A stretch of 24,090 nucleotides of DNA. Origin: Octopus sinensis (lineage: Eukaryota). The translations under genes were made by a program, and so were the position numbers. The stretch is from the NCBI RefSeq assembly GCF_006345805.1, contig NW_021836445.1:1-24090 (forward strand), read 5' to 3'. Below the pieces are notes generated by a model. The model was not told where the DNA came from. It worked only from the letters and a program-made list of their open reading frames with translations, and searched no databases. This document shows, piece by piece, positions 4,325-17,215 of the stretch; the first letter of the stretch is position 1; each line of letters begins with the position of its first letter.

Positions 4325-4728
4325 GCGGTGAGCTGGCAGAAACGTTAGCACGTCGGGCGAAATGCTTAGTCGTATTTCGTCTGCCGTTACGTTCTGAGTT
4401 CAAATTCCGCCGAGGTCGACTTGCCTTTCATCCTTTCAGGGTCGATAAATTAAGTACCAGTTACGCACTGGGGACAATGGAATCGACTTAATCCGTTTGT
4501 CTGTCCTTGTTTGTCCCCTCTATGTTTAGCTCCTTGTGGACAATAAAGAAATAAGAATCGTTAACACGCGGGGCGAAATACCGATAAGTTCAAATTTCGC
4601 TGAGATAGACTTTTCCATTCAGGTTCGATTAAATAAGTACCAGTTGCGCACTGCGGTCGGTGTAATGGACTTAATTCCGCCTTCCCACAAGCTGCCCCTG
4701 CGACAAAATTTTGAAATTATTATTATCC
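4325..4728 (+). mobile_element. F1 tRNA-derived SINE dimer: unit 1 with the usual tail, unit 2 internally deleted with an alternative tail
   Basis: A-box-like TGGCAGAAACGTTAGC, B-box GTTCAAATTCC, central GCCTTTCATCCTTTC.GGGTCGATAAATTAAGTACCAG; junction AAAGAAATA|AGAATCGTTAAC at ~4545-4564. Confidence 0.9.
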
Positions 4729-4734
4729 TTTTCA

Positions 4735-4882
4735 CTATGGGCACAAGACATGAAAATTTTGTGGGGAGGCTGGGTGCTGGTCGATTACAGCGGCCCCAGT
4801 GTATAACTGATGATTTATTTTATCGACCGCGACGGGAAGAACGGCAAAGTCGACCTCGGTAGAATTTGAACTCAGAGCGTTT
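4735..4882 (-). mobile_element. Older F1-related SINE (alternative tail), tail-to-tail with 4325-4728
   Basis: GGCAAAGTCGACCTCGGTAGAATTTGAACTCAGAGCGT is the reverse complement of the B-box/core region. Confidence 0.8.
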
Positions 4883-4964
4883 CGACCGACACGTTATTTG
4901 TAACATAGGGAAGATGTTAGCCGATTATATCGCCCCAATACTTGAGTCAATACAAATAATTCAT

Positions 4965-5162
4965 AAGGAAATAGGTATTTCGTCTGTCTTTACGTTCTGA
5001 GTTCAAATTCAGTCGAGGTCGACTTTGCCTTTCATTTTTTCGGGGTCTATTAAATAAGTACCAGTTACGCACTGGGGTCAATGGAATCGACTTAATCCGT
5101 TTGTCTTTCCTTGTTTGTCCCCTCTGTGTTTAGCCCCTTGTGGGTAGTAAAGAAATAGGTAT
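4965..5162 (+). mobile_element. F1 SINE, one circularly permuted unit (~184 bp) lacking the A box
   Basis: Starts AAGGAAATAG|GTATTTCGTC and ends AAAGAAATAG|GTAT. Confidence 0.9.
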
Positions 5163-5291
5163 ATAGTATAAACATTGACATTATCTTTCCGAATCTGGCA
5201 GCATTTCATATCGAAGGCTTGGTCTTCCAAAGTCATCTTGGTTTATTAGTCGACCTAACTCTTTTGGGAGTAAATTTTGGTTTGAAAAATT

Positions 5292-5314
5292 CGTCTTGTA
5301 TGCCGGATAATACG
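5292..5314 (-). mobile_element. Possible solo terminal inverted repeat of a Tc2/pogo-like DNA transposon, followed by TA
   Basis: Reverse complement TA|CGTATTATCCGGCATACAAGACG resembles the CCGTATTTTCCGGCGTATAAGACG-type ends, recalled from memory; no partner end found. Confidence 0.4.
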
Positions 5315-5534
5315 TAACAAGCAGGTTCGTTTTTCCAGTAATTATTTCGGTTATTTTGGCGATTTAAATATAATTAAGTGGCACATTGTGCTGAAAATGC
5401 TCCCCAGTGCCGCAGGTAGTGCACGTCTTCAGCTGAATCGATTAGAGCCTGATAATTGAACCCATAAGCTAGCGATTGCCAGCTTAACACATCGTAGGAA
5501 TGTTACACATACACACACCACACACACACACACA

Positions 5535-5796
5535 TAAGCATTTCACCCGGCTTACTAACGTTTCTTATTTCTTTATTGCCCACATGGGGCTAAACACAGA
5601 GGGGACAAACAAGGACAGACAAAGGGATTAAGTCGATTATATCGACCCCAGTGCGTAACTGATACTTAATTTATCGATCCCGAAAGGATGAGAGGCAAAG
5701 TCGACCTCGGCGAAATTTGAACTCAGAACGTAACGGCAGACGAAATACCGCTAAGCATTTCGCCCGGCGCGCTAACGTTTCTGCCAGCTCGCCGCC
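5535..5796 (-). mobile_element. Full F1 SINE whose tail runs ~31 nt into a second head
   Basis: Minus strand reads GGCGGCGAGCTGGCAG...AAAGAAATA|AGAAACGTTAGTAAGCCGGGTGAAATGCTTA. Confidence 0.93.
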
Positions 5797-6358
5797 TTAG
5801 CCATTGTGAATATTACAATACACTTGATTATGCATTAAACTACATACACAAATAATGAGTGAATGAGTGAGTGAATGAGTGAGTGAGGAGTTGAGTGTGA
5901 TAGACAGAGTGTGAGTGAAACAGTGACAGTAATAGAGAGTGGATTCCCCTTACTAATTGACCATATATTCACATATTGAGAGCTATGGCTTTTTTTTTCT
6001 CTTTACATATCATATATTACATTTATACTTTCGAAAAATCAATATTTTAAATCTTCCATCCTTCGATTACTCTCCTTTTTGGTGATTGCCTTTACCACCG
6101 AATATATGACCCATCTTCAAATTATGTGCAAAAGTCAGCTTTATTAATTATCAACTGCATTTTATACTATTTAATTAAAAATAAACTTAATTAAATTCTT
6201 TAAAATTTTTGTTGTATATTCATAATTATCTATATAACTTTCTGTCTTTATCTACGTAATTACGTATCTATTATGTAAATGTGTGTGTGTGTACATATAT
6301 AAGGGTGTATATACATGTATGCCTATACGATTGTATATACGTATGCATAGACATATAC

Positions 6359-6359
<1 letters not shown>

Positions 6360-6434
<75 letters not shown>

Positions 6435-14645: not shown

Positions 14646-14701
14646 CTATGCAATATCTATACTTAAATCATGAGAAAGAAAGCAATGTTGATTGGGATCA
14701 G

Positions 14702-14815
14702 ATCTTTTGTTATTAAAAAGTGCGACATTGGAAAATCTGTTATTAAAATGTGCGGTACCGGCAAATTTTCTATTAAAAAGTGGGGCACCAGAAAAAAATG
14801 GTTTGGGAAACACTG
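14702..14815 (-). mobile_element. hAT (Charlie-like) transposon end with three 30-bp subterminal repeats
   Basis: Reverse complement starts CAGTGTTTCCCAAAC; flank GTCTAAAT resembles the nTCTAGAn target; units T(G/T)(T/C)TATTAAAA(A/T)GTG start at 14708, 14738 and 14768. Confidence 0.62.
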
Positions 14816-14851
14816 GTCTAAATTCAAGTTCTGAAACTTTTGAATAAGGTA

Positions 14852-14960
14852 CAAGTCGATTGCATCGATCTCAATGCTTAACTGTATTTAGGATGAAAAG
14901 CAAAGTCAATCTCAGCGGAATTTGAACTACGAACACCGTCAAGAACTACCGCCAAGAACT
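14852..14960 (-). mobile_element. Old, internally deleted F1-related SINE
   Basis: AAGTCGATTGCATCGATC..GCAAAGTCAATCTCAGCGGAATTTGAACT. Confidence 0.72.
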
Positions 14961-15107
14961 ACTGAACAAAATTGATACTTTTGTCCAGCAAGCATCAATT
15001 TTTTAGAACGTTTTGTTCTAAAGCCATTCTGATTACTGATTCTTCTAAAACCAGGTGTGGTCGTACTCTAGATTAAAGAAATATTAAATTTACCTAAATA
15101 TTTTAAT

Positions 15108-15346
15108 GAAATACCTATTCCTTTACTACCCACAAGGGGCTAAACACAGAGGGGACAAACAAGGACAGACAAACGGATTTAGTCGATTACATCGACCCCA
15201 GTGCGTAACTGGTACTTAATTTATCGACCCCGAAAGGATGAAAGGCAAAGTCGACCTCGGCGGAATTTGAACTCAGAACGTAGCGGCAGACGAAATACTG
15301 CTAAGCATTTTGCCCGGCGATCTAATGTTTCTGTCAGATCGCCGCC
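15108..15346 (-). mobile_element. Full F1 SINE flanked by a ~160-180-bp direct duplication
   Basis: Complete head, core and tail; flanks 14934-15116 and 15349-15511. Confidence 0.93.
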
Positions 15347-15584
15347 CTCATCGTCAAGAACTATCGCCAAACATTTTGTTCAGAAAGTATCAATTTTCTT
15401 GAACGTTTTGTTCTAAAGCCATTCTGATTACTGATTCTTCTAAAACCAGCTGTGGTCGTACTCTAGATTAAAGAAATATTTAATATACTTAAATATTTTA
15501 ATGAAATACCTGTCGATAAGATTATTAATACTGTACTGAACAAGATACTAGTAAACTAGTCTAGCGCCCGTGTGAAATTGAAGT

Positions 15585-15880
15585 TCCTTCTTTGTTTGTT
15601 TGTTTGTTTGCTTGTTCAGCGAAGCGGTCTTCGTCGCAGAGAAAGCAAGATCGCGCCTCAGGATTGTCTGTAGAAGTCCGAAACGTGGTCCTTTGCTATT
15701 CGTAAGACCTGCAGAAGAGAGAGCAGGTCAGACCCCGACACCGAGAGCATCGACGGATGAATGACTGCGCATCCAGGTTCAGCGGTTGGTAGGAAGAAAG
15801 AGTGAGAGAAAGTTGAAGCGAAAGAGTATTACAGGGGTCGCCTCCACCCCCTGCCGGAGCCTCGTGGAGCTTTAGGTGTT
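15585..15880 (-). mobile_element. F3 SINE variant (shared domain + unique body + (CAAA)n tail); tRNA head absent
   Basis: Reverse complement begins AACACCTAAAGCTCCACGAGGCTCCGGCAGGGGGTGG, as at 19964ff. Confidence 0.8.
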
Positions 15881-16190
15881 GAAGTTTCTGCTCATAAATT
15901 TAATGCAGATTATAAGAGATTTTGGGTCATCTGTGTCCGGAAAGCCAGTGTTGTAAATGCAGGAAGGAAAAGGAAAGGAAATAAATAATGGAAAGAAAGG
16001 GAAATTCGAGAAGTTTGAAGAATGATTCCATGGAGATTATGCAGGAATGTCTAACATATATATTCATATTTATATACAAAATTTAACTTATATTTATTCA
16101 TATGCAATGTATGTTATTCTTATACGTAAACATAAATATTTATGTATATACATAAGCGTATGCAAATATCATATTGTTCTCCTTGTGCAG

Positions 16191-16242
16191 TGAAAATAAC
16201 TTATAATCTAGTATTATATTATCAAGCCGTTATTATTACCAG
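16191..16242 (+). other. Candidate internal exon (52 nt), peptide xKITYNLVLYYQAVIITx; gene unknown
   Basis: Acceptor TTGTTCTCCTTGTGCAG, donor CAG|GTAAGT; exactly one open frame. Confidence 0.35.
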
Positions 16243-16788
16243 GTAAGTTTTGTCCCCAAAATAATCGCAATAAACAGCTTTATTTGTACATACACATAAG
16301 CGTACAGATACTCATATATTTATAATCACAAAATACCTTGTCTGGTCCCCCAGATATTTCTTTGATTTATAAGGAGAAGAAGCCCCATAATTATGGTACT
16401 TCTGAACCCATCGTGAATTCTAGTAAAGCCTTTGCTGTGATTTTCTCAGTCTGTGGGCCATACGTTTGCTAGGATTTTCTTGGTTTCAATCAGTAGAGAA
16501 AAATTTCGGCAGTTCCCAGTGGTTCCCGTCGCCTAAAGGGACAAGATTAACATCGTTCAAAACCTAAATGCACTCAAATTACAATACAAATGGAAGTGTT
16601 ATCAAGGAACTTGAATCCAAAGGTCTCATGCATTATAAATCCCCGACCTTTGCCATTTAATCCACCATTGGTACTAACTATGCAGATCACCCTTGGAACG
16701 TTGGAGGCAATATTGTTCATAATATATTCTTCATAAAGAAATTATTTTGAATCATATTGTCATTATTATTAATATTTGAATGGTGTGA

Positions 16789-17215
16789 GGCGGCGAGCTA
16801 GCAGAATCGTTAGCACACCGGGCGAAATGCGTAGCCGTATTTCGTCTGCCGCTACGTTCTGAGTTCAAATTCCGCCAAGGTCGACTTTGCCTTTCATCCT
16901 TTCGGGGTCGATAAATTAAGTACCAGTTACGCACTGGAGTCGATGCAATCGACTTAATCCCTTTGTCTGCCCTTGTTTGTCCCCTCTGAGGGCAGTAAAG
17001 AAATAAGAATCGTTGGTACGCCGGGCGAAATACTTAGCAGTATTTCGTCTGCCGCTACGTTCTGAGTTCAAATTCCGCCGAGGTCGACTTTGCCTTTAAT
17101 CCTTTCGGGGTCGATTAGATAAGTGCCAGTTATACACTGGGGTCGATGCAATCGACTTAACCCCCTCCCCCAAGTTTACCTTTGTGGCAAAAATCATTAT
17201 TTGAAATCATTATTA
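16789..17215 (+). mobile_element. F1 SINE dimer; unit 1 tail shortened, unit 2 with the alternative tail
   Basis: Type B junction AAAGAAATA|AGAATCGTTGG at ~16997-17016; ends CCCCTCCCCCAAG..TTTGAAATCATTATTA. Confidence 0.92.

What the first reader, a model, noticed from the sequence alone, without database searches (positions are those of the whole stretch)
4325..17215. F1 SINE spreads as head-to-tail concatemers with two fixed junctions: candidate multimeric or circular-RNA retroelement
Seen: the tail is repeatedly fused back into the head at only two positions. Type A (AAAGAAATA[G/A]|GTATTTC, unit ~184 bp) occurs at ~4965, 5151 (partial), 7272, 9567, 10361, 10761 and 15108. Type B (AAAGAAATA|AGAA[A/T]CGTT, unit ~218 bp) occurs at ~4545, 5555, 10545, 11663 and 16997. 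Insertions can start with a tail stub (4965, 10345) or end a few to ~31 nt into a new head (5162, 5535, 11650). Established: in target-primed reverse transcription the 3' end of the insert mirrors the 3' end of the RNA. Inference: the template RNA itself was multimeric, from read-through of tandem master copies or from rolling copying of a circular RNA, as proposed for metazoan retrozymes. I found no hammerhead core (CUGAnGA) on either strand of the unit. This is the best candidate for an undescribed system here, but the family may already be catalogued.
Basis: partly seen in the sequence, partly recalled or inferred. Interest (0 to 1): 0.72.

Follow-up and report, generated by a model that had tools for sequence, protein, structure and literature searches.

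The report
Multi-unit SINE copies with two fixed joints
A short mobile element in this animal (probably cephalopod) DNA was mostly copied as two to four linked units joined at two exact points, which fits inherited compound source genes, a known kind of element, rather than a circular self-cleaving RNA.

Summary
All 12 listed junctions are present: 7 type A (tail nt 231 joined to head nt 48) and 5 type B (231 joined to nt 15), against about 0.1 expected by chance. Of 15 complete F1 tails in the window, 11 run into another unit, and none of 9 heads is preceded by a tail.

Corrections:
- Three of the five type B junctions join F1 to a different right-hand unit ("F2", with its own tail). Position 11650 is therefore not a 31-nt stub.
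- The GGTATTTC at 15108 is target DNA.

A multi-unit RNA template is supported:
- Single target-site duplications bracket whole arrays III, IV, V and VII.
- Most arrays start at head nt 1-6.
- Three copies run 5-31 nt into a next unit.

Circular RNA or rolling copying is not supported. No ribozyme match was found, even at lax thresholds. Types A and B are mixed within one array. Units of one array differ at subfamily-diagnostic sites, and tail variants are linked to junction type. The junctions therefore look inherited from compound multi-unit source genes.

This resembles the TSD-(SINE)n-TSD arrays described in a clam. Penelope-like mobilisation remains an open, more novel possibility. No genome-wide data could be reached. 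Interest is modest.

The parts
4325..4553 (+). Array I, left unit: F1 nt 2-231, tail variant GGACAATAAAGAAATA
   Evidence: blastn to the reference copy, 90% identity; alignment
4554..4726 (+). Array I, right unit after the type B junction (4545-4562). F2-type unit starting at nt 15 (AGAATCG), with an internal deletion and its own tail ...AAAATTTTGAAATTATTATTAT
   Evidence: no TSD detected for this array
4965..5162 (+). Array II: ~11-nt tail stub (TAAGGAAATA), A junction, one unit nt 48-231, A junction, then 5 nt (GGTAT) of a next unit
   Evidence: no TSD detected
5535..5796 (-). Array III: F1 nt 1-231, B junction, then nt 15-45 of a next unit (31 nt), followed by (TG)n. Imperfect ~17-bp TSD at 5808-5823 and 5498-5514
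   Evidence: TSD score reached by 0 of 500 shuffles
7095..7452 (-). Array IV: left unit (nt 6-15 joined to nt 66-231, internal deletion), A junction (AAAGAAATAAGTATTTCG), right unit nt 49-231. 25-bp TSD ATATGCAYGAGTTATTCTRCTCAAG at 7463-7487 and 7069-7093
   Evidence: TSD reached by 0 of 500 shuffles
9392..9803 (-). Array V: F1 nt 3-231, A junction, unit nt 48-231. 13-bp TSD TATATGTTGTYTG at 9812-9824 and 9377-9389
   Evidence: TSD reached by 8 of 500 shuffles
10342..10956 (+). Array VI: 29-nt tail stub (nt 203-231), A junction, unit 48-231, B junction, unit 15-231, A junction, unit 48-230. It is inserted into a copy of another SINE family
   Evidence: no convincing TSD; no Rfam match at E<=10
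11493..11898 (-). Array VII: F1 nt 1-231, B junction, diverged F2-type right unit (nt 15-168 plus tail ...TTTGAAACC). 15-bp TSD ATAATAAKTCCWGGT at 11901-11915 and 11477-11491
   Evidence: TSD reached by 0 of 500 shuffles
13089..13321 (+). Single-unit F1 copy (nt 1-231 plus AA). 18-bp TSD TATATTATTTACARGAAT at 13069-13086 and 13322-13339. It interrupts a decayed transposon-like ORF
   Evidence: (0 of 500 shuffles)
15116..15346 (-). Copy IX: F1 nt 1-231, whose tail abuts GGTATTTC that belongs to the target
14979..15116 (.). Direct repeat flanking copy IX. The second copy is at 15374-15511 (93% identical over 138 bp, with weaker similarity out to ~175 bp). Read as an unusually long target-site duplication
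   Evidence: local alignment
16789..17216 (+). Array X: F1 nt 1-231 (with a 14-nt deletion near the tail), B junction (AGAATCG), F2-type right unit with tail ...TTTGAAATCATTATTAT
   Evidence: no TSD detected
6599..6640 (-). Isolated 42-nt piece of the F1 tail region (nt 188-229, 79% identity) lying between microsatellites
14619..14645 (-). Isolated F1 head fragment (nt 1-27) bracketed by an 8-bp inverted repeat
20705..20857 (+). Related family: F1 head nt 1-~100 joined to an unrelated body

Best explanation
F1 is a short non-coding retroposon (SINE-like: ~231 bp, flanked by target-site duplications, with a box-B-like GAGTTCAAATTCC at nt 72-84). Its active source genes were compound. A left unit carried the full head, and one or more head-truncated units followed it.

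The units were joined at two ancestral fusion points. Junction A joins tail nt 231 to nt 48. Junction B joins nt 231 to nt 15, most often leading into a related F2-type unit with its own tail.

Transcripts started at nt 1 and ran through several units, because neither the unit nor either junction contains a T4 terminator. A partner reverse transcriptase copied these RNAs by target-primed reverse transcription. It started at, or up to ~31 nt downstream of, any unit's tail, usually at TA-rich target sites.

This mechanism would yield copies of one to four units, each sharing one target-site duplication. Some copies have short run-ons into the next unit, and 5'-truncated copies begin with a tail stub.

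Shown here: the junctions, the single TSDs, the start positions, the run-ons and the linked variants. Inferred: polymerase III transcription, the read-through, the site of reverse-transcription initiation and the identity of the partner.
For: - The two junctions are exact and recurrent: 7 A and 5 B, against ~0.1 expected each. Eleven of 15 tails run into another unit.
- One TSD brackets each whole array: IV 25 bp, VII 15 bp and III ~17 bp (each reached by 0 of 500 shuffles), and V 13 bp (8 of 500). The single-unit copy has an 18-bp TSD.
- Eight of ten F1 arrays or copies begin at head nt 1-6, and none of 9 heads is preceded by a tail. This fits a defined transcription start.
- 3' ends lie 5, 8 and 31 nt inside a next unit (II, IX, III). 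In IX the 8 nt are present in both copies of the flanking repeat, as expected if the nicked target annealed to an RNA that continued into an A unit.
- All 6 non-first F1 units carry at least one of three variants (T61/T63, GATTAAATAAGT, GTGTGTAG), and none of 8 first units does (hand-calculated Fisher 1/3003; sites chosen after seeing the data).
- The tail variant GGGTAG precedes A junctions in 5 of 6 cases and B junctions in 0 of 5 (p = 0.013). GGGCAA precedes B in 3 of 5 cases and occurs nowhere else. Junctions thus travel with linked variants, as expected for descent from compound masters.
- The consensus has seven T3 runs and no T4. F2-type tails carry AAAATTTT near their end (sequence).
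- Within-array unit identity (89.2%) equals between-array identity (89.5%), so the arrays are not recent local duplications.
- The same architecture, TSD1-(SINE)n-TSD1 with a full-headed first unit and head-truncated later units, is described in the clam Scapharca broughtonii (PMC11481361).
Against: - Only one 24-kb window (about 20 units) and one outside copy (L001) could be examined, so the statistics are small and the diagnostic sites were chosen post hoc.
- The three right-unit variants occur in mosaic combinations. This needs several masters, long heterogeneous master arrays, or recombination.
- No TSD was found for arrays I, II, VI and X.
- No master locus, transcript or partner element was seen.
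- The head is not recognised as a tRNA by ARAGORN or Rfam and box A is weak, so polymerase III transcription is assumed.
- Both 5'-truncated arrays start within the last 30 nt of a unit, which simple random truncation does not predict.
Confidence: 0.6

Rival explanations
1. Concatemers are made afresh at each insertion. The reverse transcriptase reaches the 5' end of an F1 RNA that was processed at nt 14/15 or 47/48, then jumps end-to-end onto the 3' tail of another F1 RNA, as R2-type enzymes do in vitro (the in vitro behaviour is from my own knowledge).
For: - The junctions are exact and show no shared microhomology.
- Nt 48 is the first nucleotide of the 3' arm of a predicted 13-bp hairpin (31-43 paired with 48-60, loop 44-47). 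A cut in that loop would give exactly this 5' end.
- Right-hand units form a sequence population distinct from full-headed units. This could reflect a separate pool of processed RNAs.
Against: - The tail variant of the upstream unit correlates with the type of junction that follows (5/6 against 0/5). Independent RNAs joined at random should not show this.
- No extra or missing nucleotides occur at any of the 12 junctions.
- No jump from a full-length 5' end (tail to nt 1) is seen among 9 heads.
- The 31-nt run-on in III would need priming inside a head fragment.
- The hairpin has no covariation support.
Confidence: 0.15
2. F1 is mobilised by a hammerhead-less Penelope-like element (Naiad type) rather than a LINE. 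The multi-copy head-to-tail insertions, the ~30-nt stubs and the optional 33-nt segment (nt 15-47, the difference between B and A) would then be the Penelope-like signature: internal initiation of reverse transcription at two nearby sites on a multi-copy RNA.
For: - Penelope-like elements and their non-autonomous derivatives insert as partial tandems or multi-copy head-to-tail arrays, with a 30-40-bp 'tail' at either end. Naiads lack hammerheads, occur in many invertebrate phyla and prefer (TA)n targets (PMC8557442).
- Reverse transcription starts at two internal sites on multi-copy RNA (PMC11167929).
- Here there is a 29-nt stub at the 5' end of VI, a 31-nt run-on at the 3' end of III, and a 33-nt difference between B and A.
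- All four tails that end in flanking DNA abut (A)TATAT.
- TSD lengths are variable and long: 13, 15, 18, 25 and ~140-175 bp.
- Penelope-like elements are reported as abundant and recently active in Octopus vulgaris (PMC13282606).
Against: - No Penelope-like or other reverse-transcriptase sequence lies in the window for comparison with the F1 tail.
- No inverted 5'-truncated partner copies are seen.
- The upstream unit is the complete one here, whereas in Penelope-like elements the upstream copy is the truncated one.
- LINE clades that use microsatellite-like tails (reported in the same genome) could give similar ends.
- This rival concerns only the partner. It is compatible with the best explanation.
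Confidence: 0.12
3. The arrays are DNA-level products: a SINE-derived satellite that grows by slippage or unequal crossing-over and is dispersed by segmental duplication or by re-integration of extrachromosomal circles.
For: - SINE-derived tandem repeats are known in squamates (PMC10702118).
- TSD-mediated unequal recombination has been proposed for the clam arrays (PMC11481361).
- Arrays I, II, VI and X lack detectable TSDs.
- DNA-level expansion may well have built the longer master arrays.
Against: - Identical junctions occur at eight to ten separate loci with unrelated flanks.
- TSDs bracket four arrays.
- Arrays start at nt 1-6 rather than at random phases.
- Units within an array are no more alike than units from different arrays.
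Confidence: 0.07
4. One reading: a 184- or 217-nt circular RNA is copied by rolling reverse transcription, as proposed for metazoan retrozymes.
For: - The unit sizes lie in the 170-400-nt range of animal retrozyme RNAs (PMC7229834).
- Array II is slightly longer than one unit (stub + unit + 5 nt).
- Tail nt 226-231 can pair with nt 50-55.
Against: - No hammerhead or any other Rfam ribozyme matches at E<=1 (window) or E<=10 (array VI), and there is no CUGAnGA in any unit.
- A and B junctions alternate in array VI, and its two A units differ at diagnostic sites.
- Most arrays start with head nt 1-47, which lie outside the supposed circle.
- The unit shows no unusual fold stability (z = 0.05).
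- Three B junctions join different unit types.
Confidence: 0.03

Closest known systems
TSD1-(SINE)n-TSD1 tandem-like SINE arrays of the blood clam Scapharca broughtonii (PMC11481361)
   Same: One target-site duplication surrounds several head-to-tail units. The first unit has the complete head, and later units share one fixed head truncation. The host is a mollusc. Arrays may also include units of another family.
   Different: In the clam the internal units are also truncated in the tail, whereas here every internal unit keeps its full tail. Here there are two alternative truncation points (nt 15 and 48), and most copies in the window (11 of 15 tails) are multi-unit. In the clam about 3% of copies are in arrays. 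That paper proposed unequal recombination, not multi-unit RNA.
Dimeric or composite SINEs (Alu and other dimer/trimer SINEs; reviewed in PMC4758252 and PMC13023118)
   Same: A promoter-bearing left monomer is fused once to a promoter-poor right monomer. The fusion point is then inherited by all copies, and left and right monomers carry their own diagnostic differences.
   Different: F1 copies vary in unit number (1 to at least 4) and combine two junction types. Single-unit copies appear to be made from the same RNAs by initiation at the first tail, whereas classic dimeric SINEs have a fixed structure.
Penelope-like elements and their non-autonomous derivatives (PMC8557442, PMC11167929)
   Same: Both show multi-copy head-to-tail insertions, ~30-nt extensions at an end of the insertion, an inferred multi-copy RNA template with internal initiation, a TA-rich target preference, and no hammerhead (as in the Naiad and Chlamys clades).
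   Different: No sequence link to any Penelope-like element was tested. F1 has a SINE-type head with a box-B-like motif. The complete unit is upstream rather than downstream. No inverted truncated copies are present.
Metazoan non-LTR retrozymes (PMC7229834; bioRxiv 10.64898/2026.07.22.740005)
   Same: Both are tandem units of 170-400 bp, non-coding, dispersed through an animal genome, and common in molluscs.
   Different: The defining type I hammerhead is absent. The arrays have a distinct promoter-bearing first unit. The units of one array are not copies of one circle.
SINE-derived satellites of squamate reptiles (PMC10702118)
   Same: Both are tandem repeats whose monomer is a portion of a SINE.
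   Different: The squamate repeats are few, long, locus-specific arrays (subtelomeric) that grow at the DNA level. Here the arrays are short, dispersed, flanked by TSDs, and share identical junctions between loci.

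Membership tests
SINE (short non-autonomous retroposon mobilised by a reverse-transcriptase-encoding partner) | Short (under ~600 bp), non-coding, dispersed in many copies | tested here: met
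   The unit is ~231 bp, with about 20 units in 24 kb on both strands. One further copy lies in an unrelated contig, L001. The only long open frame is an antisense artefact with one database match.
SINE (short non-autonomous retroposon mobilised by a reverse-transcriptase-encoding partner) | Target-site duplications flanking the insertion | tested here: met
   TSDs of 13-25 bp were found for III, IV, V, VII and the single-unit copy. None was found for I, II, VI and X.
SINE (short non-autonomous retroposon mobilised by a reverse-transcriptase-encoding partner) | Head derived from a tRNA, 5S or 7SL gene, with internal polymerase III boxes A and B | tested here: inconclusive
   A box-B-like GAGTTCAAATTCC lies at nt 72-84 and the consensus has no T4 run. 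However, ARAGORN finds no tRNA, Rfam gives no tRNA match, box A is weak, and the head is predicted to fold as one long hairpin. The negatives are weak, because clearer tRNA-like heads of another family in the window were missed too.
SINE (short non-autonomous retroposon mobilised by a reverse-transcriptase-encoding partner) | 3' region shared with the partner LINE | not testable with these tools
   No LINE or Penelope-like element lies in the window. No host genome or repeat library could be reached.
Compound (dimeric or multimeric) SINE family | The same fusion point between monomers at independent loci | tested here: met
   7 A and 5 B junctions lie in one register at loci with unrelated flanks.
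Compound (dimeric or multimeric) SINE family | The whole multimer is inserted as one piece (one TSD) | tested here: met
   Arrays III, IV, V and VII.
Compound (dimeric or multimeric) SINE family | Left and right monomers carry their own diagnostic differences | tested here: met
   6 of 6 non-first units against 0 of 8 first units carry right-unit variants, and tail variants are linked to junction type. The sample is small and the sites were chosen post hoc.
Metazoan retrozyme | Type I hammerhead ribozyme in each unit | tested here: not met
   Rfam cmscan at E<=1 over the window and at E<=10 over array VI gives no ribozyme. No CUGAnGA occurs in any F1 unit.
Metazoan retrozyme | [quoted passage not shown] | not testable with these tools
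   No RNA data are available.
Metazoan retrozyme | Tandem genomic repeats of 170-400 bp | tested here: met
   Periods of 183-184 and 217 bp. Arrays have at most about 3.2 units.
Non-autonomous Penelope-like element | 3' end (or pseudo-LTR) homologous to an autonomous Penelope-like element of the host | not testable with these tools
   No host Penelope-like sequence is available.
Non-autonomous Penelope-like element | Partial-tandem or multi-copy head-to-tail insertions with a 30-40-bp tail extension at one end | tested here: inconclusive
   Multi-copy insertions are present. There is a 29-nt stub (VI) and a 31-nt run-on (III), but also 5-11-nt ones (II), and only two or three cases in all.
Non-autonomous Penelope-like element | Inverted 5'-truncated copy adjoining the upstream end | tested here: not met
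   None of the ten arrays has one.
SINE-derived satellite | Long locus-specific arrays homogenised at the DNA level | tested here: not met
   Arrays have no more than about 3.2 units. Within-array identity (89.2%) equals between-array identity (89.5%).

The most novel reading that the evidence does not exclude
F1 would be the first SINE-type element (its own promoter-bearing head, no coding capacity) mobilised by a hammerhead-less Penelope-like retroelement. That enzyme copies multi-unit RNA and starts at two internal sites ~33 nt apart. The two start sites would explain the two junction types, the ~30-nt stubs at either end, the TA-rich targets and the long, variable target-site duplications. 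If so, concatemer formation would be a property of the enzyme and not only of inherited compound masters.
Probability: 0.12. Interest if true: 0.7.

Novelty: new member of a known kind. Interest (0 to 1): 0.33.

Why it matters
SINEs are reported to make up about 12% of an octopus genome, and almost all of the 900 recently active SINE families there are unclassified (PMC13282606). If much of that expansion ran through multi-unit transcripts, three things follow. First, repeat libraries built on monomer consensus sequences would mis-count copies and mis-date them. Second, the 3' run-ons and stubs would give a direct read-out of where the partner reverse transcriptase starts and stops. Third, the partner could be identified from the tail, whether it is a LINE or a Penelope-like element. 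As it stands, the finding is a clear local example of a phenomenon already described in a bivalve, not a new kind of element.

Tried and rejected
- **Sequential insertion of monomers into each other's tails.** Rejected because one TSD brackets each whole array, and nested insertion would leave head nt 1-47 of the older copy upstream, which is not seen.
- **Recent local slippage or duplication.** Rejected because within-array identity equals between-array identity.
- **Microhomology-mediated 5' joining to explain nt 15 or nt 48.** The B junction keeps both AGAAA copies. The A junction is an inverted match, not a direct one. A switch at the shared GAAAT would give a different product. I found no homology-based route (reasoned).
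- **Hammerhead or other ribozymes.** None found.
- **Unusual RNA stability.** z = -1.4 for the monomer and 0.05 for the 184-nt unit. The head hairpin has no covariation.
- **Fetching more copies.**
  - A search with an antisense open frame spanning an A junction found one protein on a 543-bp metagenome contig. It carries a single-unit F1.
  - Two exact-pattern scans of metagenome contigs found nothing.
  - A search with the decayed transposon-like ORF next to the single-unit copy returned only distant animals, at most 61% identity, so no host loci could be fetched.
- **Pfam scan of non-SINE ORF fragments for a reverse transcriptase.** No hit; a first attempt failed on stop codons.
- **Literature search for a prior description of this octopus family or of Penelope-mobilised SINEs.** Nothing specific was found in the searchable library. 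Dfam, Repbase and SINEBase could not be consulted.

Full report
**Setting.** The window is AT-rich animal DNA, dense in microsatellites and in at least four short interspersed repeat families. From memory the repeats look octopod, but I could not verify the organism. I used it as the reference, nt 1-232.

**Check of the observation.**
- A blastn map and direct reading of each locus in element orientation give ten F1 arrays or copies, labelled I-X (the label VIII is not used).
- The type A junction motif occurs 7 times with at most 2 mismatches, against 0.07 expected. The type B motif occurs 5 times against 0.09 expected.
- Junction A joins tail nt 231 to head nt 48 (184-bp unit; Tandem Repeats Finder periods 183-184). 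Junction B joins nt 231 to nt 15 (217 bp).
- All junctions are in the same register.
- Of the 15 complete tails in the window, 6 continue into an A unit, 5 into a B unit, and 4 end in flanking DNA. None of the 9 heads is preceded by a tail.

Four details need correction:
1. At 4545, 11662 and 16997 the unit after the B junction is a related but different unit (F2-type) with its own tail (TTTGAAA plus ATT repeats). These are heterodimers.
2. The insertion does not end near 11650. The right unit runs to about 11493.
3. The GGTATTTC after the tail at 15108 is present in both copies of a 138-bp direct repeat that flanks that copy. It is therefore target DNA.
4. The 217-bp F1 unit occurs only once.

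**How the arrays were inserted.** I compared 45 nt on either side of each array against 500 shuffles. A single TSD brackets whole arrays:

| Array | TSD length | Shuffles reaching the score |
|---|---|---|
| IV | 25 bp | 0/500 |
| VII | 15 bp | 0/500 |
| III | ~17 bp, imperfect | 0/500 |
| V | 13 bp | 8/500 |

- No per-unit TSDs exist. This excludes sequential insertions.
- Arrays I, II, VI and X show no TSD.
- Eight of the ten arrays or copies begin at head nt 1-6. The two that do not (II, VI) begin with a stub of the preceding tail, 11 and 29 nt long.
- Three copies end 5, 8 and 31 nt into a next unit (II, IX, III).
- Copy IX is informative. Its flanking repeat begins with GGTATTTC in both copies. 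The nicked target could therefore have annealed to an RNA that continued past the tail into an A unit. This is inference.
- Together these features say the template RNA contained more than one unit and had a defined 5' end.

**Inherited junctions or junctions made afresh.**
- Units within an array are no more alike than units from different arrays (89.2% against 89.5%). Recent local duplication is therefore excluded, but this measure cannot separate the other models.
- The alignment does separate them. All six non-first F1 units carry at least one of three variants (T61/T63, GATTAAATAAGT, GTGTGTAG). None of the eight first units does (hand-calculated Fisher 1/3003; sites chosen post hoc).
- The tail variant GGGTAG precedes A junctions in 5 of 6 cases and B junctions in 0 of 5 (p = 0.013). 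GGGCAA precedes B in 3 of 5 cases and occurs nowhere else.
- The two A units of array VI differ at these sites.
- Junctions thus travel with linked variants, and left and right units are separate lineages. Compound source genes predict this. Random joining of RNAs does not, and neither does repeated copying of one circle.
- The right-unit variants occur in mosaic combinations, so several masters, long heterogeneous masters or recombination must be assumed.

**Transcription.** The F1 consensus has seven T3 runs but no T4, and neither junction creates one. F2-type tails carry AAAATTTT near their end. A polymerase III transcript starting at nt 1 would therefore read through F1 units. Polymerase III itself is assumed:
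- There is a box-B-like motif at nt 72-84, but box A is weak.
- ARAGORN and Rfam do not call the head a tRNA.
- The head is predicted to form one long hairpin, without covariation support.

One curiosity: nt 48 is the first nucleotide of the 3' arm of the apical 13-bp stem. I keep this as the main argument for the template-jump rival.

**Circular RNA and ribozymes.**
- Rfam at E<=1 on the window and at E<=10 on array VI alone returns no ribozyme.
- CUGAnGA occurs at chance frequency in the window and in no F1 unit.
- The 184-nt unit folds like shuffled sequence.
- With mixed junction types in one array and head nt 1-47 at array starts, the retrozyme-like reading fails its defining feature (PMC7229834) and several predictions. 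RNA data would be needed to exclude it outright.

**Comparison with known systems.**
- The closest description is in the clam Scapharca broughtonii. Its TSD1-(SINE)n-TSD1 arrays have a full-headed first unit and later units that share one head truncation (PMC11481361).
- Classic dimeric SINEs share the logic of a fusion point inherited by descent.
- Penelope-like elements offer the most interesting parallel. They show partial tandems and multi-copy head-to-tail insertions of non-autonomous derivatives, a 30-40-bp tail at either end, hammerhead-less Naiads with (TA)n targets (PMC8557442), and internal initiation at two nearby sites on multi-copy RNA (PMC11167929).
- The corresponding F1 features are a 33-nt difference between B and A, a 29-nt stub and a 31-nt run-on, (A)TATAT at all four tail-to-flank junctions, and TSDs from 13 to ~140-175 bp.
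- I could not test homology of the F1 tail to any partner, and no inverted truncated copies are present. This stays a minority hypothesis about the partner, compatible with compound masters.

**Limits.** Only this window and one 543-bp outside contig carrying a single-unit F1 were available. Two metagenome scans and a second protein route gave no host loci.

**Verdict.** The multi-unit template is supported and the circular-RNA mechanism is not. The best reading is a compound multi-unit SINE family with two inherited junctions. That makes it a new member of a known kind, of modest interest, with a testable and more novel possibility that a Penelope-like enzyme is the partner.

Noticed in passing
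window 3345-3655 (-): A second repeat family also shows a partial tandem. Its full copies lie at about 12090-12515 (-) and 19050-19450 (+) and contain an internal microsatellite. Here a ~150-nt head part is followed directly by a full copy, so multi-unit structure is not confined to F1.
   Followed up: partly
window 12800-14600 (-): A decayed transposon-like reading frame (motifs CYFCMWDSR and GERFHQDLKTIEERY) has no Pfam match but 354 homologues across animals. The best is 61% identical to a Tachypleus tridentatus protein. The single-unit F1 copy at 13089-13321 interrupts it.
   Followed up: partly
window 14979-15116 and 15374-15511: A 138-bp direct repeat (93% identical, with weaker similarity to ~175 bp) exactly flanks one F1 copy. 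If it is a target-site duplication, it is unusually long.
   Followed up: yes
window 14619-14645 (-): An isolated F1 head fragment (nt 1-27) is bracketed by the 8-bp inverted repeat GATATTGC/GCAATATC. Ordinary 5' truncation cannot produce a head-only piece.
   Followed up: no
window 20705-20857 (+): The F1 head (nt 1 to ~100) is joined to an unrelated body. This is an example of module exchange between repeat families.
   Followed up: no
window 4716-4745: Array I and an inverted F2-like copy (4745-4885, -) abut tail to tail on a shared (ATT)4 tract. This suggests insertion into the microsatellite tail of an older copy.
   Followed up: no
window 18771-18840 and 19866-19940 (+): Two clearly tRNA-like heads of a further SINE family were not reported by ARAGORN or by the Rfam scan. 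Those negative results are therefore weak evidence about the tRNA ancestry of F1.
   Followed up: no
window ~8015-8040: A short interstitial telomere-like repeat, (CCCTAA)4.
   Followed up: no
window 6599-6640 (-): An isolated 42-nt piece of the F1 tail region lies between (CTAT)n and (GATA)n microsatellites. It is either an extreme 5' truncation or the 3' end of the unknown partner element.
   Followed up: no
L001 172-398 (-): A 543-bp contig of an ENA metagenome assembly (ERZ23499442) carries a single-unit F1 copy, 88% identical to the consensus. Its tail abuts ATATATT, and part of the second repeat family lies beside it. Host DNA of a related animal is therefore present in that sample.
   Followed up: partly
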